Assembly (NCBI GenBank): GCA_907165135.1
Contig: OU015567.1
Span: 4,960,001-5,024,000, forward strand
Source: Oikopleura dioica
Lineage: Eukaryota; Animalia; Chordata
Reading direction: 5' to 3'
DNA: 64,000 nucleotides
The notes beneath the pieces were generated by a model. That model did not search any database, was not told the origin of the DNA, and saw nothing but the letters and a program-made list of their open reading frames with translations. Positions 2,778 to 48,039 of the stretch are shown here, in pieces. Both the position numbers and the translations under genes were made by a program. Each line of letters begins with the position of its first letter. The first letter of the stretch is position 1.

Positions 2778-3300
2778 TTTCCAATAATTTAGGTTTCTTT
2801 TTTCTGTCGACCGATGGTTCTCAGCTTTTGGAAGTCCCTTTTTATGCGTCTTAACAGGGCCAAAAACAGCTGGACCAAATGCGATACAAGTTCTTATCGC
2901 TGTCCAGAGATTGTCAATTATGTTTTCACGTTTTCTGCAAGATTTCTTCAACGTGAAGCGTTTTTGAGTCGATAAATCGGTGGTTGAAAGCCGTAAAGCT
3001 ATCGATAATGGATGCAGCTTGGCTGTTTTTGGAATTATCGAAATGTTGAACGAAATGGCTAGCTTCCATCTGTGTAGGGTTTATTTTTCCGATGTTTTTC
3101 GCTTTGGTGAAGAGAAATCATCAACACCAAAGAATACGAGAATTAAGGATACAAGTTTATTCTAGAGCAAAAAAGACTGTCAGAAAAAAAATTCCTAGCC
3201 CCTGGATACCGCCAAGATTGTCCCTCAATCAGCTGCATGCTAAGCATCCAGAGGTACTAAGAATTAATGAAAAAATTTACAGAGATAAAAAGAGACGATT

Positions 3301-4355
3301 CTACTTGGTGCATTCGAAAAGAGCCCATTGTTGGGTGCCATCTTTGCATCGAACGAGCTTGATTTCCCAGCCTTCGCGAATGTCAGTGTAGTCTTTTTGG
3401 CTGTGGGCTTTCAGGTAGTCCTCCTTGATTTCCTGGGAAAACGATGAAAAATATGTCGCTTAGATTTTTATTGTACCTCGAGACGGGCGAGTTCCATCTC
3501 CAAAATTTCAATGAACCATTCTGACATATTCGTAGCTTTTACGTCAAAACCAGCGCCCTTGAGAAAATCAGCGTATTCGTTCATTGGGCGGAGGTCGTAT
3601 TTACGATCGGCGAGGTAGGTCCAGAACTCTTCGGTTTTCTCTTCGTCTGGGCAGCAAATATAATCTAGAGGCTTTCTTTTATCACGTGAAAGAGGAGAAC
3701 GACTAACCTGAGATGACTAGTCTTCCTCCTGGTTTGAGCCATTTGTAGAATCTGGCAAAGAGATCGGCCTTCTCTCGAATATGAATGATGCAATCCCTCG
3801 AGTAGATGACATCAAACTCTCCTTCTTCAAAATCTCGGATGAGCGCATTTGCATGTTCGAAAGTTATTTCGTCGGAAATATTGTTTTCCGCCGCCCGTTG
3901 CCTAATCAAAAAAATATTGCGAAAAGAAGAGGGGTGCCCTCTTACCGTCCGACGGAGAGCATATTGTGTGAGAGATCGATTGCATGAACTTTGACGCCGT
4001 AATTTTGGACCATGAGAATTTCTCCGCCGCCGATTCCGCAGCCAACGGACAGGACTTTTTCACCCTTTTTCAGGTTCATCTAAAATTTACCGGTTTTTCA
4101 CGGGAAGAGGTATGATGACTCACATTTCCGACGATCTTTTCTGTAGTCGTCTTTCCTCCTGTAGAGATGAAGCCTCTGCCGAAGATCTTTTCGTATCGTA
4201 GAATTCCATTGAGTTTGTATTGCGAGTTATCAAGAAAATCTGAAAGTTTTTGGGGCGACTATTTTTGAGTCAAGAAGCTTACCTTGAAATTGATCGGAGT
4301 CTTTATTGTCGATTGACTCGACATCTTTTCGTTTGTCAGCAAAATTGGCCGTCAT
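3301..4355 (-). CDS. pmt: Phosphoethanolamine N-methyltransferase, single C-terminal-type (MT2) SAM domain
   Basis: Six exons with ~43-nt GT-AG introns. Motifs [60 protein letters not shown] and C-terminal [23 protein letters not shown], all typical of PEAMT. Confidence 0.92.
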
Positions 4356-41598: not shown

Positions 41599-44500
41599 TC
41601 AAACTTCATCATCATCTTCTTTCCCTGTGAAAGCCAAGGATTTTCTTCTATAATCCGATTTCTCGTCCAAATTGCGCATGTCCAGCAGCTCAAGTTTATC
41701 CAGGCATATAAATTTCGTTCGAAAATCCAAAGCGAACGCGAAGCGAAAGCGAAAAATTTTTCCAGCCAAAAAGCGAAGCGAAAGCGAAGCGAACGCCTAT
41801 CTTGCAAAGCGAAGCGAAAGCGAATTCGCCAAGCGAAAAATTCGCCAAAAGCGAAAAATTCGCCAAAAGCGAAAATTCGCCAAGACTGAAAATTCGCCAA
41901 GAGTGAAAATTCGCCAAAAGCGAAAATTCGCCAAAAGAGAAAATTCGCCGAAAGCGAAAATTCGCCAAAAGCGAAAATTCGCCAAAAGCGAAAATTCGCC
42001 GAAAGCGAAATTTTGCCGAAATTGAAAGATATCGAAAGAAATTTGAATAAAACGCGATCTAATAAGATGAAACTTTGACCCATTTTTCTAACTTAGTATA
42101 ATAATTATGACACAGTTTTGGAACACCCAGAAGCTGAGCTTTCGTTTGAGCTTGATAAGGGATACCCATCAAAATGAAAGCTCAGTTTCTGGGCTTTCTA
42201 AACCGAGAATTTTTGAAGGCCCAGACTCTGGCAGTCATTTTGAGCTCTAGAAAAGTAGGACGGGGGTGGGATATCTGGGAAGCTAGGGGCTCTTCAAGTT
42301 AGGGAACTCGACCAAAATTGAGTACTTTTTCCCAAAAAGTACACGATTTGAATTCTTTTAATCGACATTTATTCATTCATAAGTGTTTATAATGTCGTTT
42401 GGGGTCAACTAAGGTCATTTAGGTCAAGAATAATTGAAAATTCAGAAAAGTCAAAATGACAGCCAGAGCCTGAGCTAAAATCGAGTATAGGTAGCAGCCC
42501 CTAAAAGTCTTAGTCTTTCAAAAATTCCCATTTCCGAAGTTGGCCAGATTTTGGGACTTCCGAGATGGGGTCGGCAAAAATGGTGGAAATGGTGGGTGGG
42601 TGGATGGTGGGTGAGTGGTGGTGGGCAACCCATCCACCACCCTCAAAAATCTGAAATGGTGGGAAGTGGTGGGAAAGATTTTTCGGGCAAACTTTTTTGG
42701 CGAAATCTTTCAAAAAGATCACTTCTCTATCTAAAATGACTTTACCTCTACTTCGTTTTCCTTTTGTTGGTTAAAGATGACCGAAGAATCGGTGTTATCA
42801 ACTCCTATTCAGAATAGGCTATTCTATGAATTTTGGGGTCAGAAAAACGCTTACGAAAAAAATCCACCACCCACCCGCCATTCACCCACCACCGCTACCT
42901 TAAAGTACCCACCACCACCCACCCCCACCAGTGAAAATTTGATTTTCTTGACAACCCACCCACCTCCACCAACGGCTGGTGACCAACCATCGCTTGGTGG
43001 CTTGCCGACCCCAGCTTCGGACACGGTTCTAAATCGACTAGTCGAGTTTCTACTAAAGTCGAAGTCGAAATCTAGCCGAAAAAGTCGAAAATAATCACTA
43101 TTTTGCTTTCGACTTTTCGACTTTTCGTTCGACTTTTGACTAAATTTCGACTTTTCGACTAATTTGCGACTTTTTCGACTAAATTTATATATTTTTTCCA
43201 GTTTTTCGACTTTTCGACTAATAAGTCGATTAAGTCGACTCGACTCGATTCGACTCGACTCGACATTGGATTTTCAGATAGCCTTTCGACTCGACTCGAC
43301 TCGACTTCTGATTTTCAGCTCAGATTTGGAACCCTGGCTTCCTAAATGCCCTCAGATCACCCCCACCTATCAGAAGCCAAATGATCCCCAGCTTCACGGT
43401 GTTCTAAAACTGTATTAACCCTACTAAGTTAGAAAAGGAGCTCAATTATAAGTGATTTCCCCTATTTATACCGCGATATTATTAAGACGAAAAAGTAAGA
43501 TTCGGCAAAATATTGGCGAAAGCTGGGGTCGGCAAAAAATGGTGGAAGTGGTGGGTGGGTGGGTGGTGGGTGGGTGGTGGTGGGCTTCCCACCCACCACC
43601 ACCCACCATCACAATTCTTCAAAATTAGAAAATGGTGGGAAATGGTGGGGTTTTTTTTGGCCGAAAATTTTGGGAGCCCCAAGTCAAAATTTTGTTCTTG
43701 AACAGTTGTTTACTTATTAGAGCATTTTGAAAATAAATTGTTCTAGATGAGCAGAATCACTGTTATTGTCATCAATTAGTACTAGAATTTGTTAAACATG
43801 GCGTCAGCGCCTAAAAAATCAAAAATTGACGTTGAAGCAAAAGTCATAGAGAAAATAAGGAACAATGATGGCGTTTGGGCAAAATGCACGCATCCTCCAG
43901 TGGTCGAGTACTGTCGACAGATGAATCATCCTTGATTTTTGGAATTTTTCGACGATTCTAAATCCACAGGTTTTTTAAAATGTGGCAGATCTAAATGTGG
44001 ACACAACAAACCAAAACCAGTACGTTTATTTTTTTTAATTCTCGCTTTTGGGGGCCCCAATAAGAAAAGATTTAGTTTTTTAATGTCCGAAAAAAAGAAT
44101 GCTTGTACTACAGACGTGATTGGGAAAACCACGTCAAAAACTGCCGAGAAGTTCCGACAATATCAATCCAAGACAAGGTGGCCAACAGAAATTGCTACTC
44201 TTCTAAACAATTGGATGTGATAACGACTCAGCAGGCGCTTTTGACGGCTGTTACCTCTGCAACCCTTGATTTTTGGTCAAAATCCGAATTACTACCATTG
44301 TACAAGGCAGTAATTTGCCCTCTTGGAGGTACCGAGGCATCAGCAGAAGCCTTGATTACTGATGCGAGATGGATCGGACGCAAGCTCGACGAGTTAAACA
44401 GTGAGCTAGAAGCTCTATTTATAAAGAAAGGTACTTTTTTATTTTTTTGAAAAATAATTTTGGGAATCCCAAAAATTCTTGGGGCCCCAAGGTTAATTGG

Positions 44501-46046
44501 GAGCCCCAAAAATATTGGGGACCCCAAATAATATTGGGAATCCCAAATAACAAATATAAATAGCCCCGATACTCGCGAGAAATGGCCAACTTACGTGCTT
44601 AATCGACCATCAAGTTCAAAATCGTGGACCAAAAGAAGAGTGTGGAAAGTATTTGGGGATAATGATTGTTATTCTCGATATTCTGAAATATGAGAAGATA
44701 CCTTTGATGATCGGCTTTGAGCCCATTGAAACAAGCGCAAGTTTGGAAAATCTAGATCCTGTTCGTAGAATTCTCGAGGTAAATTATTTTTAAAGGATTT
44801 TCAAAGACAAGTCATTATATATTCAGCAATATAATTTGAAAAATGCAGTCGAAGAAGGCCACGTGGAAGTTTGTACTGACTCAGCTAGAGACGCTGTTCT
44901 TCTTGCCAAAAAACTCTCCCCTCTTGGAAACACCTCACAATGCTCGGCCCATGGCGTTATGCGAACTCGCGAAAGCGAAAGCGAACTCTTGGCGAAAGCG
45001 AGAATTCGGCGAAATTTTGGCGAAAGCAAACTTCTGGCGAAAGCGAGGCCTTGGCGAAAGCGAAATTTTGGCGAAGATTTGCCGAAAGCGAAAATTTGGC
45101 GAAAGCGAGGCCTCGGCGAAAGCGAATTTTTGGCGAAAATCGGGGACAAAAAGCGAAAGCAAAGCGAAAATCAGGAGTGTCATTTTCGGGGGGCGAAAGC
45201 GAAATTTTCTATTCGCCTTCGCTTCGCTTTCGCTTTTGGCGAAAATCGCCAAGCGAATTTATATGCCTGAGTTTATCCTTTCCCCAAATTTGGTGAACAA
45301 GTTCTCGTTCGTCTGCGCCTTCGTCAATAAATTCTTGGGCGAGCTTTTTCATAAATCTTGAGCTCTTTTTTCTGAAAGCAACAGATTAACGATCAATAAA
45401 ACAGCAAAAGAATGACTTACTTATTGACATTAAGAAGCCGCCAGGCAGGTGGGTCCTTAACCCATTCCGATGTGTTATCCCGTTGCAGCGCAGGAATAAC
45501 ATTGAAGAAAATCAGCAAAGCAACTTATGATTTTTTTGAGAAAAAAACAAAAATGAAGGATTCTTACCCAAGGAGAAAATAAACCCAATAGCCGCTACGG
45601 CCATCAAGCTCGTTTCTTGCGCATCAGTTCCTGTCACTTCCCCTCTTTCGCCTAAGGATATATTTTTTAATGGTTGATTCTCTTTGTTCATGTGTTGAAA
45701 ACCTGAGTCAGGGTCTGAAAGATCATTTATCAAAAGTTCTCAGATCCTGACTCAGGGTTTCAGATCCTGACTAAGGTTTCAGATCCTGAGTCAGGTTTTC
45801 AGATCCTGACTCAGGGTTACAGATCCTGAGTCAGGGTTTCAGATCCTGACTCAGGGTTACAGATCCTGAATCAGGTTTTTGAATCATCTAAAAATCAAGC
45901 CATTTTCTCTCACCTGAATTTGCGTTATTATTGGCATTTGAAGTAGTACTGCCGCCAGAACTACTCTTCCTCGCATTTGCGGTTTCCAAGCAGACCAAGC
46001 TCAAAATTAAAAAAAGTTCCAAAAGAACATTTTCTCTAAAACTCAT
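41599..46046 (-). CDS. Type I membrane protein (~180 aa) whose last exon is split by a 3.57-kb hAT element
   Basis: Exons 46046-45914, 45681-45568, 45523-45421 and 45371-45270 + 41692-41599, with GT-AG introns. Signal peptide and TM (LMAVAAIGFIFSLVALLIFFNVI). Removing the element and one TSD gives ...HQIWGKDKLELLDMRNLDEK...DDDEV*. Confidence 0.85.
42565..43014. mobile_element. Nested hAT-like MITE with CCACC/GGTGG repeats
   Basis: TIR (A/C)TGGGGTCGGCAA; degenerate 8-bp TSD CTTCCGAG/CTTCGGAC. A second partial copy lies at ~43525-43690. Confidence 0.7.
43022..43336. mobile_element. Nested hAT-like MITE with TCGAC repeats
   Basis: TIR CA(C/G)GGTTC; degenerate TSD GCTTCGGA/GCTTCCTA; interior arrays of GTCGA and TCGAC. 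Confidence 0.65.
43798..44965 (+). pseudogene. hAT transposase, 5' half, with a premature TGA and truncated after the CxxH motif
   Basis: Exons 43798-44019, 44076-44430, 44564-44778 and 44827-~44965. BED-like finger (CGRSKC...HVKNC); LTCLIDH...YLGIMIVILD; VCTDSA; CSAH. TGA at 43933-43935. The frame runs directly into the right subterminal repeats. Confidence 0.85.
45700..45880. repeat. 20-bp tandem array TCAGATCCTGA(C/G)TCAGGGTT derived from MITE family A
   Basis: About 7-8 units, each with a CCTGA(C/G)TCAGG palindrome. Intronic. Confidence 0.88.
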
Positions 46047-47039
46047 CTTCTTGAGCACTTACACGTTGTCTAAAATTGCGAAACATAAAAAAAGATAACT
46101 CGCAATCAGAGTTGAGCCGCGATATCGTTAAAACGCAGGCAATAAATTCAGAATGCGCTTTCTTTCATTCTCACACTTGATTCTTTTTTGAGACTGATTT
46201 CAAGTTCTGGAGCTGCGTAAAAATCCTGAGTCAGGGTTCTGAATGATTATGATGACTAATGAAAATCCGCGAAGATTCAAATGGCTATTCGGCCGGCTTG
46301 CGGCTTCGATTTGAAAAAGCCGCTACGCGGCTTTTCATTTAAGATCTTCAAGACCTGACTCAGGTTTTCAACGCAGGATTTCGAGCCGAAATTCGAAGAA
46401 AAAGCGTTGCGGAGACTTGACTAACCGTCAGTAATGCTATGTTTCTGACAAAATATTAATTATCAATTATAACTGCCAGAAAAAATTCTTTACCCCACGT
46501 GGCCAAGAAGAAGCTTTTCCAGAAAAAGCGCGGTATAAGTTTTACGGGCTGTTTTTGTTGTGACACGAATTTTTATGATTTTGTCTCAAAGTCGCGATAT
46601 CAAAATGATGACAGGCGAGAAAGAAGAAAAGAGACACTGTCTGGGATCAGCAACCTGTAAAGAAAACCTGAGTCAGGAATTAAGAAAATTGAGATGAAAA
46701 GCCGCGCAGCGGCTTTTTTGAAAACGAAGTCGCAAAACACTCTTCGAAAAATTCTGGCAAAGCCGCTTTGCGGCTTCGGTTTCAAAACAAGCTGCTGCGC
46801 GGCTTTTCATATCAGTTCTTTCAGACCCTGACTCAAATTTTCTACCCTGATTGTTGAGCCCAGGATATCGTTTTCTCGGTATATTTTGACTTGTTGATGG
46901 TTCTAAGGAATGAAAAAAAACTTGCTTGAATTCGACCATAATCGAGTGACGGATTGACCAAAAATTAAGAGCATTTGTCTTGTTGACGCCTTCTCGCGAA
47001 ATCCTGAAAAGCTGCGAGGTTATCCGTTTTTCTGGGGAG

Positions 47040-48039
47040 CAGGGATGTGCCTTCGCAGTGCGGATTCCGCACTAAACTTCGCAGTGCGAAGTGCGATTGC
47101 GGAAATTTCGCACTTCGCACCGCACTCAGACCTGATATTTTTTCATCGCACCGCACTTCGCACTTTCCGCAAAATTTTTGAAAAGTGCGATTCTTTTCGC
47201 AGTCGTATCCCGCACTATTTAACCTTCATCGCACTTCGCACTTTGCGGATTCTGCGGTCCATTTGCCGACAATTTCTGTTAATTTTTGTCTTTTTGGGCC
47301 GTCTCAGCCCCGTTCCATGATTTTTGAGTTTAAGGGGCTTGACGGCCCTTCGGGCCAGGCATATAAATTCGCTTGGCGATTTTCGCCAAAAGCGAAAGCG
47401 AAGCGAAGGCGAATCGAAAATTTCGCTTTCGCCCCCCGAAAATGACACTCCTGATGTTCGCTTCGCTTCCGCTTTTTGTCCCCGATTTTCGCCAAAAATT
47501 CGCTTTCGCCGAGGCCTCGCTTTCGCAAAATTTTCGCTTCTGGCAAATCTTCGCCAAAATTTCGTCTCAGCCCCAATCCATGATTTGTAAGTTTAAGGGG
47601 CTTGACAAAGGCTTTGAACTCTGAGTTGATCAAGCTTAGTTCTGTCCCCAACCCCACCCACACCCGTCACATAAAAAATTCAAATTATCATTGTTTGAAG
47701 CTCAATTATGGTTATGATTGAAAGTTTTGAAAATTATTTCTATTCTGGGCGTGGGAGAAATTTTCGGCGATTTTTATTCATTTTTCCTTCTCTCTCAAAA
47801 AATCGCAATTTTTTCGCACTTTTCATTTATTTTCCGCACTTCGCACTTTCGCACTTCCGCACTTTCCGCACTATCGCACAATTTTCCGCAATTTTTGTCC
47901 ACATTTCGCACTTCGCACTCTGCGTCGCACTGCGAAGAAAAATTTGAAAAATCGCACTTCGCACCGCAGAAAAACCCGCAAAAAAAATCGCACTTCGCAC
48001 CGCACCGCACTCGAAAAAAAAGCAAAAGGCACATCCCTG
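47040..48039. mobile_element. Non-autonomous hAT element with GCACTTC-type repeats
   Basis: TIR CAGGGATGTGCC; exact 8-bp TSD CTGGGGAG (47032-47039 and 48040-48047). It contains a one-ended piece of the 41701 family at 47356-47566. Confidence 0.93.

What the first reader, a model, noticed from the sequence alone, without database searches (positions are those of the whole stretch)
41693..45277. 3.57-kb transposase-bearing hAT element inserted in a host coding exon, with nested MITEs
Seen in sequence: identical 14-bp TIRs and an exact 8-bp TSD bound an element containing a spliced hAT transposase remnant (BED-like finger, first two catalytic-Asp regions, CSAH). The remnant has one stop codon and is cut off right after CxxH. 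Two other hAT-like MITEs, plus a partial copy of one of them, sit inside its left part. Removing the element restores the last exon of a complete type I membrane protein gene. Inference: this is a recent insertion of a deletion derivative, mobilised in trans by an active hAT family. I cannot say whether this family is already catalogued.
Basis: partly seen in the sequence, partly recalled or inferred. Interest (0 to 1): 0.75.

Follow-up and report, generated by a model that had tools for sequence, protein, structure and literature searches.

The report
Nested hAT transposons splitting coding exon
A 3.6-kb cut-and-paste transposon sits in the last coding exon of a small membrane-protein gene of the tunicate Oikopleura dioica, and the transposase fragment inside it belongs to a second, broken transposon nested within the first; this is a clean but ordinary event.

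Summary
Window 41701-45269 is a 3,569-bp element with exact 14-bp inverted ends (CAGGCATATAAATT) and an exact 8-bp target duplication (AGTTTATC). The same end occurs 33 times in this genome (Oikopleura dioica OKI2018_I69, chr2). Eleven other end pairs each carry their own perfect 8-bp duplication. An uninterrupted 57-aa ORF from an environmental assembly matches both flanks, so the insertion is in a conserved coding exon.

The interpretation needs one correction. The spliced transposase remnant has 4 exons, 303 codons and one TGA, and is cut after CSAHGVM. It is not this element's own gene. It starts 275 bp inside the left end (CTGGGGTCGGCAA) of a second 8-bp-duplication family (B). Two other loci carry that same end joined to the same ORF start. 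Six sister copies of the outer element lack this block. B has lost its right end at its expected target duplication, which most simply reflects abortive excision and repair.

hAT membership rests on the 8-bp duplications, motif order and two in-register profile matches (P = 3e-4 and 1.5e-3) to a genuine hAT of this genome. Pfam finds nothing. One of the two "nested MITEs" is family-wide; the other is private to this copy. No autonomous partner was identified. This is a new member of a known kind, of modest interest.

The parts
41693..41700 (.). Left copy of the 8-bp target-site duplication AGTTTATC
41701..45269 (.). Outer element, family A: 3,569-bp non-autonomous hAT-type transposon
   Evidence: Exact TIRs and TSD. 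There are 33 TIR copies genome-wide against 0 in the control. Sister copies L009-L016 share its termini at 94-99% identity.
41701..41714 (+). Left TIR CAGGCATATAAATT
41823..42021 (.). Left subterminal array, 17-bp unit AATTCGCCAAAAGCGAA, 11.7 copies (likely transposase-binding repeats; inferred)
42565..43014 (.). Family-B MITE (GGTGG/CCACC subterminal repeats), TSD CTTCCGAG / CTTCGGA(G). It is present in six sister A copies, so it was nested before the family amplified.
43022..43336 (.). Family-D MITE (TCGAC repeats; ends CACGGTTCTAAATC / CAGGGTTCCAAATC), private to this copy. Its TSD is eroded (GCTTCGGA / GCTTCCTA).
   Evidence: Sister copies show the empty site. The family has at least 25 loci, with TIR CAGGGTTCTAAATC and perfect 8-bp TSDs elsewhere.
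43523..44961 (+). One-ended fragment of a long family-B element: left TIR CTGGGGTCGGCAA, 5' leader and the first 303 codons of its transposase gene. The right part is lost.
   Evidence: Absent from six sister A copies. The same end joined to the same ORF start is found in L018 (771 bp, 97.5%; TSD GGCCAGAG) and L019 (285 bp, 98%; TSD CTTTCATC).
43798..44023 (+). Transposase exon 1, including the start of a CX4C...HX3C finger. In-frame TGA at 43933-43935 (GGA in the L018 copy).
44098..44430 (+). Transposase exon 2
44564..44778 (+). Transposase exon 3 (LIDHQ ... KYLG block, the first catalytic Asp region)
44827..44961 (+). Transposase exon 4, truncated (CTDSA second Asp block, CSAH), ending ...GVM
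44962..44981 (.). Junction between truncated B and family-A sequence: CGAACTC filler plus GCGAAAG(C) repeats at the position of B's expected right TSD. The breakpoint cannot be resolved to the base in this low-complexity DNA.
   Evidence: sister copies read ...TTGGCGAAAGCGAACTCTTGG...
44975..45255 (.). Right subterminal GCGAAA-type arrays of family A
45256..45269 (-). Right TIR (reverse complement of CAGGCATATAAATT)
45270..45277 (.). Right copy of the TSD AGTTTATC
45278..45371 (-). Host gene, last exon, upstream half
   Evidence: matches P0010 residues 1-27
41599..41692 (-). Host gene, last exon, downstream half with stop codon at 41599-41601; AATAAA about 27 nt further on
   Evidence: matches P0010 residues 29-56, E = 1e-15
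45421..46046 (-). Host gene exons 1-3 (46046-45914, 45651-45568, 45523-45421): signal-like N-terminus and one TM segment (residues 60-85)

Best explanation
The outer element (family A) is a non-autonomous hAT-type DNA transposon. It cut and pasted into codon 140 of a 171-codon gene for a small type I membrane protein and duplicated 8 bp of target. Its internal DNA is a stack of other hAT-type elements.

A family-B MITE and older blocks were already present in the progenitor of this A subfamily. In this copy alone, a family-D MITE and a long family-B element were added. The B element carried a spliced transposase gene. It later lost its right half through a break at its right end that was repaired into the element (abortive excision; inferred). 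This left a one-ended, immobile fragment whose ORF stops after CSAHGVM.

The A element can move only if a transposase that recognises its GCGAAA-type subterminal repeats is supplied in trans, and that source was not identified. If the element is not spliced out, the host protein loses its last 31 residues and gains 20 element-encoded ones.
For: Shown:
- Exact TIRs and TSD; 33 TIR copies against 0 in the control; 11 further pairs with unique perfect 8-bp TSDs.
- Termini are 94-99% identical among copies.
- Six sister copies join element positions 1823 and 3275 directly, reading TTGGCGAAAGCGAACTC at the junction, and also lack 43022-43336.
- The B left TIR is contiguous with the same ORF start at two independent loci, each with its own perfect 8-bp TSD.
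- The ORF has 3 GT-AG introns, correct phases and one stop.
- A 68%-identical relative on metagenome contig L031 shows pN 0.25 against pS 0.80, which indicates purifying selection. It continues to a C-terminal ...SALERAF... block followed by CCACC subterminal repeats.
- Two in-register profile matches link the protein to a PF05699-positive hAT of this genome: the first-Asp block at P = 3.4e-4 and the C-terminal block at P = 1.5e-3 with BLASTP E = 0.003.
- P0010, an uninterrupted 57-aa environmental ORF, matches the upstream flank (26/27) and the downstream flank (22/28, E = 1e-15).
- The public annotation is consistent with this: CAG5110926.1 (OKI2018_I69 chr2 g5273) is a gene model over the remnant.
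Against: - Pfam gives no hit (zf-BED, Dimer_Tnp_hAT or any other) for any exon, for P0001, or for the L031 C-terminal pieces. The hAT assignment of the protein therefore rests on weak profile matches and motif order.
- The B/A right junction lies in GCGAAAG repeats with an extra CGAAAG unit. The breakpoint and the abortive-excision mechanism are inferred, not demonstrated.
- The reverse history is not formally excluded. In it, this copy would be ancestral and the sisters would descend from one microhomology deletion.
- No RNA data were available, so the effect on the host transcript is unknown.
- The empty site comes from a related organism, not from an allele in this population.
Confidence: 0.8

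Rival explanations
1. The transposase remnant is the outer element's own gene. This copy is then a deletion derivative of an autonomous family-A element, and the sister copies are further deletion derivatives.
For: This copy sits slightly outside the tight cluster of sister copies (about 96% against 97-99%). A 7-8-bp GCGAAAG(C) repeat flanks the private block and could have mediated a deletion in the sisters' ancestor.
Against: The private block begins exactly with the TIR of another family. That TIR is joined to the same ORF start at two loci outside any A element, each with its own 8-bp TSD. The relative L031 ends in CCACC (B-type) subterminal repeats, not GCGAAA (A-type) repeats.
Confidence: 0.08
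2. The element is tolerated because it is removed from the mRNA as a new, very long intron. One candidate is a GA-AG intron from 45277 to 41689, which would cost 4 residues. Another is a weak GT-AG intron from 45298 to 41689.
For: Forty-five in-frame G[ACGT]-AG donor/acceptor combinations exist around the boundaries. Transposon-derived non-canonical introns are described in the related larvacean Fritillaria borealis (PMC11282704).
Against: The many combinations are what chance gives. None is TIR-encoded at the exact boundaries. No RNA evidence was available. From my own knowledge, unchecked here, a 3.6-kb intron would be far above the usual intron size of this compact genome.
Confidence: 0.07
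3. Assembly or haplotype-merging artefact: the element is not really in the exon in any individual.
For: The assembly merged two haplotypes of one male (PMC8008620).
Against: A perfect TSD and perfect TIRs at an in-frame exon position are the signature of true transposition, not of misassembly. No second copy of either flank exists in the genome.
Confidence: 0.02

Closest known systems
Ac/Ds of maize, including Ds derivatives and 'fractured Ac' (hAT superfamily)
   Same: 8-bp TSD, short TIR starting CAG, subterminal short repeat arrays and non-autonomous copies moved in trans. One-ended elements are produced by breaks at a transposon end. Elements nest within one another.
   Different: No sequence similarity to Ac was found. 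The TIRs and subterminal repeats are family-specific, and no autonomous partner for family A was found here.
Hermes / hobo-type hAT transposases (DDE RNase-H-like core with CxxH after the second Asp and a C-terminal dimerisation domain, Pfam PF05699)
   Same: The order and spacing of the blocks match: a zinc-finger-like N-terminus, Asp at codon 201, Asp at codon 276, and CxxH about 20 residues later. In the relative L031 there is also a C-terminal W...P.L...IA / S..ERAF block.
   Different: Too divergent for any Pfam model, with no PDB sequence match. The window copy lacks the third catalytic residue and the dimerisation domain.
The PF05699-positive hAT family of this same genome (seven near-identical copies, e.g. 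L020)
   Same: In-register matches at the first-Asp/KYLG block and the C-terminal ER.F block.
   Different: No BLAST-level similarity elsewhere, and different termini.
Transposon-derived introns of larvaceans (Fritillaria borealis; Henriet et al. 2019 as cited in PMC11282704)
   Same: A DNA transposon sits inside coding sequence in a larvacean genome.
   Different: There is no evidence here of splicing, and the element is far longer than a MITE-derived intron.

Membership tests
hAT superfamily (outer element, family A) | 8-bp target-site duplication | tested here: met
   12 of 12 complete copies have perfect, mutually different 8-bp TSDs.
hAT superfamily (outer element, family A) | Short TIRs (about 10-25 bp), typically starting (C/T)A(G/A) | tested here: met
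   14-bp TIR CAGGCATATAAATT, exact at both ends. The consensus start is from my own knowledge.
hAT superfamily (outer element, family A) | A cognate hAT transposase encoded by an autonomous family member | tested here: inconclusive
   The only long A-ended copy is L008 (8.5 kb, TSD GGTATAGA). It holds single-copy ORFs with no Pfam, word-search, Atlas or profile support as a transposase.
hAT superfamily (nested element, family B) | 8-bp target-site duplication | tested here: met
   L018 has GGCCAGAG and L019 has CTTTCATC, both perfect. The MITE at 42565-43014 matches 7 of 8.
hAT superfamily (family B transposase) | DDE core with CxxH after the second Asp | tested here: inconclusive
   Motif order and spacing fit. 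The first-Asp exon aligns in register to a PF05699-positive hAT at P = 3.4e-4. The second-Asp/CxxH exon gives no significant alignment. The third residue is absent from the window copy.
hAT superfamily (family B transposase) | C-terminal hAT dimerisation domain (Pfam PF05699) | tested here: inconclusive
   It is deleted in the window copy. In the relative L031 the two half-domains, split by an intron, give no Pfam hit. They do align in register to PF05699-positive proteins (hhalign P = 1.5e-3, BLASTP E = 0.003).
hAT superfamily (family B transposase) | N-terminal BED-type zinc finger (Pfam PF02892) | tested here: not met
   No Pfam hit on the exons or on P0001. Only a CX4C...HX3C pattern split by intron 1 is seen. 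A BED finger is common in hATs but not universal (own knowledge).
MITE / non-autonomous derivative | No coding capacity of its own; multiple copies sharing termini | tested here: met
   Sister copies of 1.4-3.6 kb carry no transposase. The ORF in this copy belongs to family B.

The most novel reading that the evidence does not exclude
Two readings remain possible.

1. The family-B protein may represent a larvacean-specific, deeply divergent hAT-like transposase lineage that current family models cannot see. It would survive in this genome only as fragments and be intact in a related marine population.

2. The exonic 3.6-kb element may be spliced out as a non-canonical GA-AG intron, which would make it an intron at birth.
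Probability: 0.12. Interest if true: 0.5.

Novelty: new member of a known kind. Interest (0 to 1): 0.27.

Why it matters
The assembly paper reports that 44% of this genome's repeats could not be classified (PMC8008620). This locus gives exact ends, target duplications and copy lists for three hAT-type families (A, B and D), and a fourth lies nearby.

It also shows that public gene model g5273 (CAG5110926.1) is a broken transposase fragment, not a host gene.

It documents a probable loss-of-C-terminus allele of a conserved small membrane-protein gene in the reference individual. It is also a clean example of a one-ended nested transposon.

None of this changes what is known about how hAT elements work.

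Tried and rejected
- Pfam on every transposase exon, on P0001, on the L031 pieces and on the host exons gave nothing.
- PDB sequence searches with single pieces and with the exon-3 profile gave nothing useful.
- The ESM Atlas gave only sub-threshold leads: KDZ-type at 0.82 for the L008 ORF, and no usable hit for L031 exon 4.
- The AlphaFold2 model of P0001 without an alignment had pLDDT 38, so no fold search was run.
- tblastx of the remnant against the PF05699-positive hATs and against L008 gave no hit below E = 1.
- L008 as the autonomous family-A copy is not supported. The word search was blank. Profile comparisons were non-significant, with only a BLASTP E of 0.005 over 34 residues.
- Own-genome searches with exon 2 and exon 3 found no fuller B copy.
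- No paralogue of the host exon halves exists.
The DNA around P0002 and P0010 and any insertion-allele contigs could therefore not be fetched.
- I first took the genome for a nematode; searches corrected this.
Exons were joined only inside scripts, to check phases, stops and hydrophobicity.
Full report
Organism and place. The window is G000:C5:4960001-5024000 of a 64,281,565-bp, 19-contig genome. These figures match the OKI2018_I69 assembly of Oikopleura dioica: 64.3 Mbp, 19 scaffolds, longest 17.1 Mbp, N50 16.2 Mbp (PMC8008620). The identification is settled by a public protein that is 100% identical to part of the finding. That protein is CAG5110926.1, named Oidioi.mRNA.OKI2018_I69.chr2.g5273, on a 16,158,756-bp contig. 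Earlier notes of this scan had already named the species. I had first taken the sequence for a nematode.

The outer element (family A). CAGGCATATAAATT lies at 41701-41714 and, reverse-complemented, at 45256-45269. AGTTTATC flanks both ends, at 41693-41700 and 45270-45277. This is not chance. The 14-mer occurs 19 + 14 times in the genome and its reversed control never does. Eleven other +/- pairs, from 119 bp to 8,481 bp apart, each carry a different, perfect 8-bp duplication (loci L008-L017). Termini are 94-99% identical among copies. The window copy is about 96% (right 295 bp) and 97-98% (left 120 bp) identical to the others. Both ends carry GCGAAA-type subterminal arrays. An 8-bp duplication, a short TIR starting CAG and subterminal repeats are the structural hallmarks of hAT elements (established knowledge).

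What is inside it. BLAST of the element against its sisters shows which parts are shared. L009 and L011-L015 share element positions 1-1321, 1641-1823 and 3275-3569. The left-hand blocks are therefore part of the subfamily's common structure, not nestings in this copy. This includes the GGTGG-type MITE at 42565-43014, whose duplication is CTTCCGAG / CTTCGGA(G).

Two blocks are private to this copy. The first is 43022-43336, a member of a TCGAC-repeat family with at least 25 loci. That family has TIR CAGGGTTCTAAATC and perfect 8-bp duplications elsewhere. Here its right duplication is eroded relative to the empty site seen in the sisters. The second private block is 43523 to about 44974, which holds the transposase remnant.

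Whose transposase is it? The private block begins exactly with CTGGGGTCGGCAA. This is the TIR of the same family (B) as the GGTGG MITE. Two unrelated loci carry this TIR joined to the same leader and ORF start:
- L018 on C2 shares 771 bp at 97.5% and is bounded by B TIRs with duplication GGCCAGAG.
- L019 on C4 shares 285 bp at 98% with duplication CTTTCATC.

A metagenome relative (see below) ends in CCACC repeats of the B type. The ORF therefore belongs to family B, not to the outer element.

At the right side, B-derived coding sequence stops at 44961. It is followed by CGAACTC and GCGAAAG(C) units that run into family-A sequence. The sisters read TTGGCGAAAGCGAACTCTTGG at the undisturbed site. 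The break thus falls at, or within a few bases of, B's expected right duplication (GGCGAAAG), and no A sequence is missing.

The simplest history, which is inferred, has three steps. B inserted into this A copy. A break was then made at B's right end and resected into B. Finally the ends were rejoined with a short filler, leaving a one-ended fragment. The reverse history is that this copy is ancestral and the sisters descend from one microhomology deletion. That needs the deletion to start exactly at a foreign TIR, and I give it about 8%.

The ORF. The exons are 43798-44023, 44098-44430, 44564-44778 and 44827-44961. They are joined by three GT-AG introns of 74, 133 and 48 nt with consistent phases. 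This gives 303 codons and one stop, TGA at 43933, which is GGA in L018. The exons were joined only inside a script, to check phase and stops.

A full HMMER scan of 1.84 billion representatives with exon 3 found two proteins. One is the public model P0001. The other is an 86-aa ORF cluster from Logan, JGI and ENA environmental assemblies at 62% identity. Its JGI contig (L031, Ga0115570_10059230, 1,996 bp) covers the end of exon 2, exons 3 and 4, and everything downstream. Over 132 aligned codons identity is 68%. Non-synonymous difference is 0.25 and synonymous difference is 0.80, which is saturated. This is a real gene kept under purifying selection in two diverged lineages.

Is it hAT? Pfam finds nothing in any exon, in P0001, or in the L031 C-terminal pieces. 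PDB sequence searches are blank. An unaligned AlphaFold2 model was unusable, with pLDDT 38.

Two independent, collinear, in-register matches nevertheless link the protein to a genuine hAT of this genome. That hAT is L020, one of seven copies scoring 39 bits on PF05699.
- The exon-3 profile aligns LIDHQ...KYLGIM to LVLDGFD...KYLGVF at P = 3.4e-4.
- The L031 C-terminal exon aligns ...SALERAFAK... to ...GSIERLFSK... at hhalign P = 1.5e-3 and BLASTP E = 0.003.

Block order and spacing also fit: finger-like CX4C...HX3C, Asp 201, Asp 276, CxxH 297-300. Family B itself makes 8-bp duplications. I put hAT membership of the protein at about 85%. It is not proven at family-model level.

The host gene. 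On the minus strand, the exons are 46046-45914, 45651-45568, 45523-45421 and 45371-45278, continuing at 41692-41602. They have strong GT-AG sites and consistent phases. Together they give a 171-residue protein with a signal-like N-terminus, one hydrophobic segment (residues 60-85) and an acidic tail ending EDDDEV. AATAAA lies about 27 nt after the stop. With the element in place the frame runs 20 codons into the TIR region and stops, giving 160 residues.

An open frame across the empty site alone is weak evidence, at roughly 12% by chance. The decisive result is P0010, a 57-residue uninterrupted ORF from an ENA environmental assembly. Its residues 1-27 match the upstream flank (26/27). Its residues 29-56 match the downstream flank 3.6 kb away (22/28, E = 1e-15). 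Both flanks are therefore one conserved coding exon in a related organism, and the element splits it between the second and third base of a Leu codon. No paralogue exists in this genome, and the exons have no Pfam family.

Mobilisation. No autonomous family-A element was identified. The only long A-ended copy, L008, is 8,481 bp with duplication GGTATAGA. It has about 3 kb of single-copy sequence with long ORFs that look transposase-like by eye. These ORFs have no statistical support. L008 also has about 2.9 kb that is 95-96% identical to a locus on C2 carrying an SMC_N-like ORF. No fuller copy of the B transposase exists in this genome. The window fragment is the largest remnant.

Splicing. 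I listed in-frame G[ACGT]-AG donor/acceptor pairs near the boundaries and found 45. They include GA(45277)-AG(41689). So many by chance means they carry no weight without RNA data.

The empty site seen is orthologous, not allelic. Repbase and Dfam were not available. The assembly paper states that 44% of repeats in this genome are unclassified, so these families are probably uncatalogued, though I cannot show that.

Verdict. This is a well-resolved but ordinary case of nested hAT-type transposons in a compact chordate genome.

Noticed in passing
window 47040-48039: Another 1-kb TIR element lies about 1 kb upstream of the host gene's start codon. Its TIR is CAGGGATGTGCC, its TSD CTGGGGAG is a perfect 8 bp, and it has GTGCGAAG-type subterminal repeats.
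   Followed up: partly
window 47356-47564: A solo 209-bp right end of family A, 96.7% identical to the right end of the main element. It is nested in the element above and flanked by a direct repeat of about 41 bp.
   Followed up: partly
L008 (G000:C5:3440952-3449432): An 8.5-kb family-A-ended unit with perfect TSD GGTATAGA. About 2.9 kb of its interior is 95-96% identical to C2:8183640-8186851 and includes an SMC_N-like ORF. This looks like host-gene capture (transduplication) by a hAT-type element. The remaining 3 kb is single-copy with long unassigned ORFs.
   Followed up: partly
window 43798-44790 (+): Public gene model CAG5110926.1 (OKI2018_I69 chr2 g5273, 241 aa) is built on the broken transposase fragment. 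It skips the TGA by an ad hoc intron and runs into intron 3. It is a transposon pseudogene, not a host gene.
   Followed up: yes
window 45700-45900 (host intron 1, minus strand): A tandem array of units about 20 bp long, of the type AACCCTGAGTCAGGATCTG, each an imperfect palindrome. Similar CTGACTCAGG motifs recur at 46240-46850.
   Followed up: no
L031 1900-1996: The metagenome contig ends in a long poly-C run after the CCACC repeats. This is probably an assembly artefact, so the right TIR of that element is not seen.
   Followed up: no
L012 (G000:C4:10731249-10734837): A family-A copy with three exact TIRs. The outer pair (3,589 bp) shares TSD GTCAGGTG and the internal left-hand blocks are duplicated, suggesting a tandem or nested A-in-A arrangement.
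   Followed up: no
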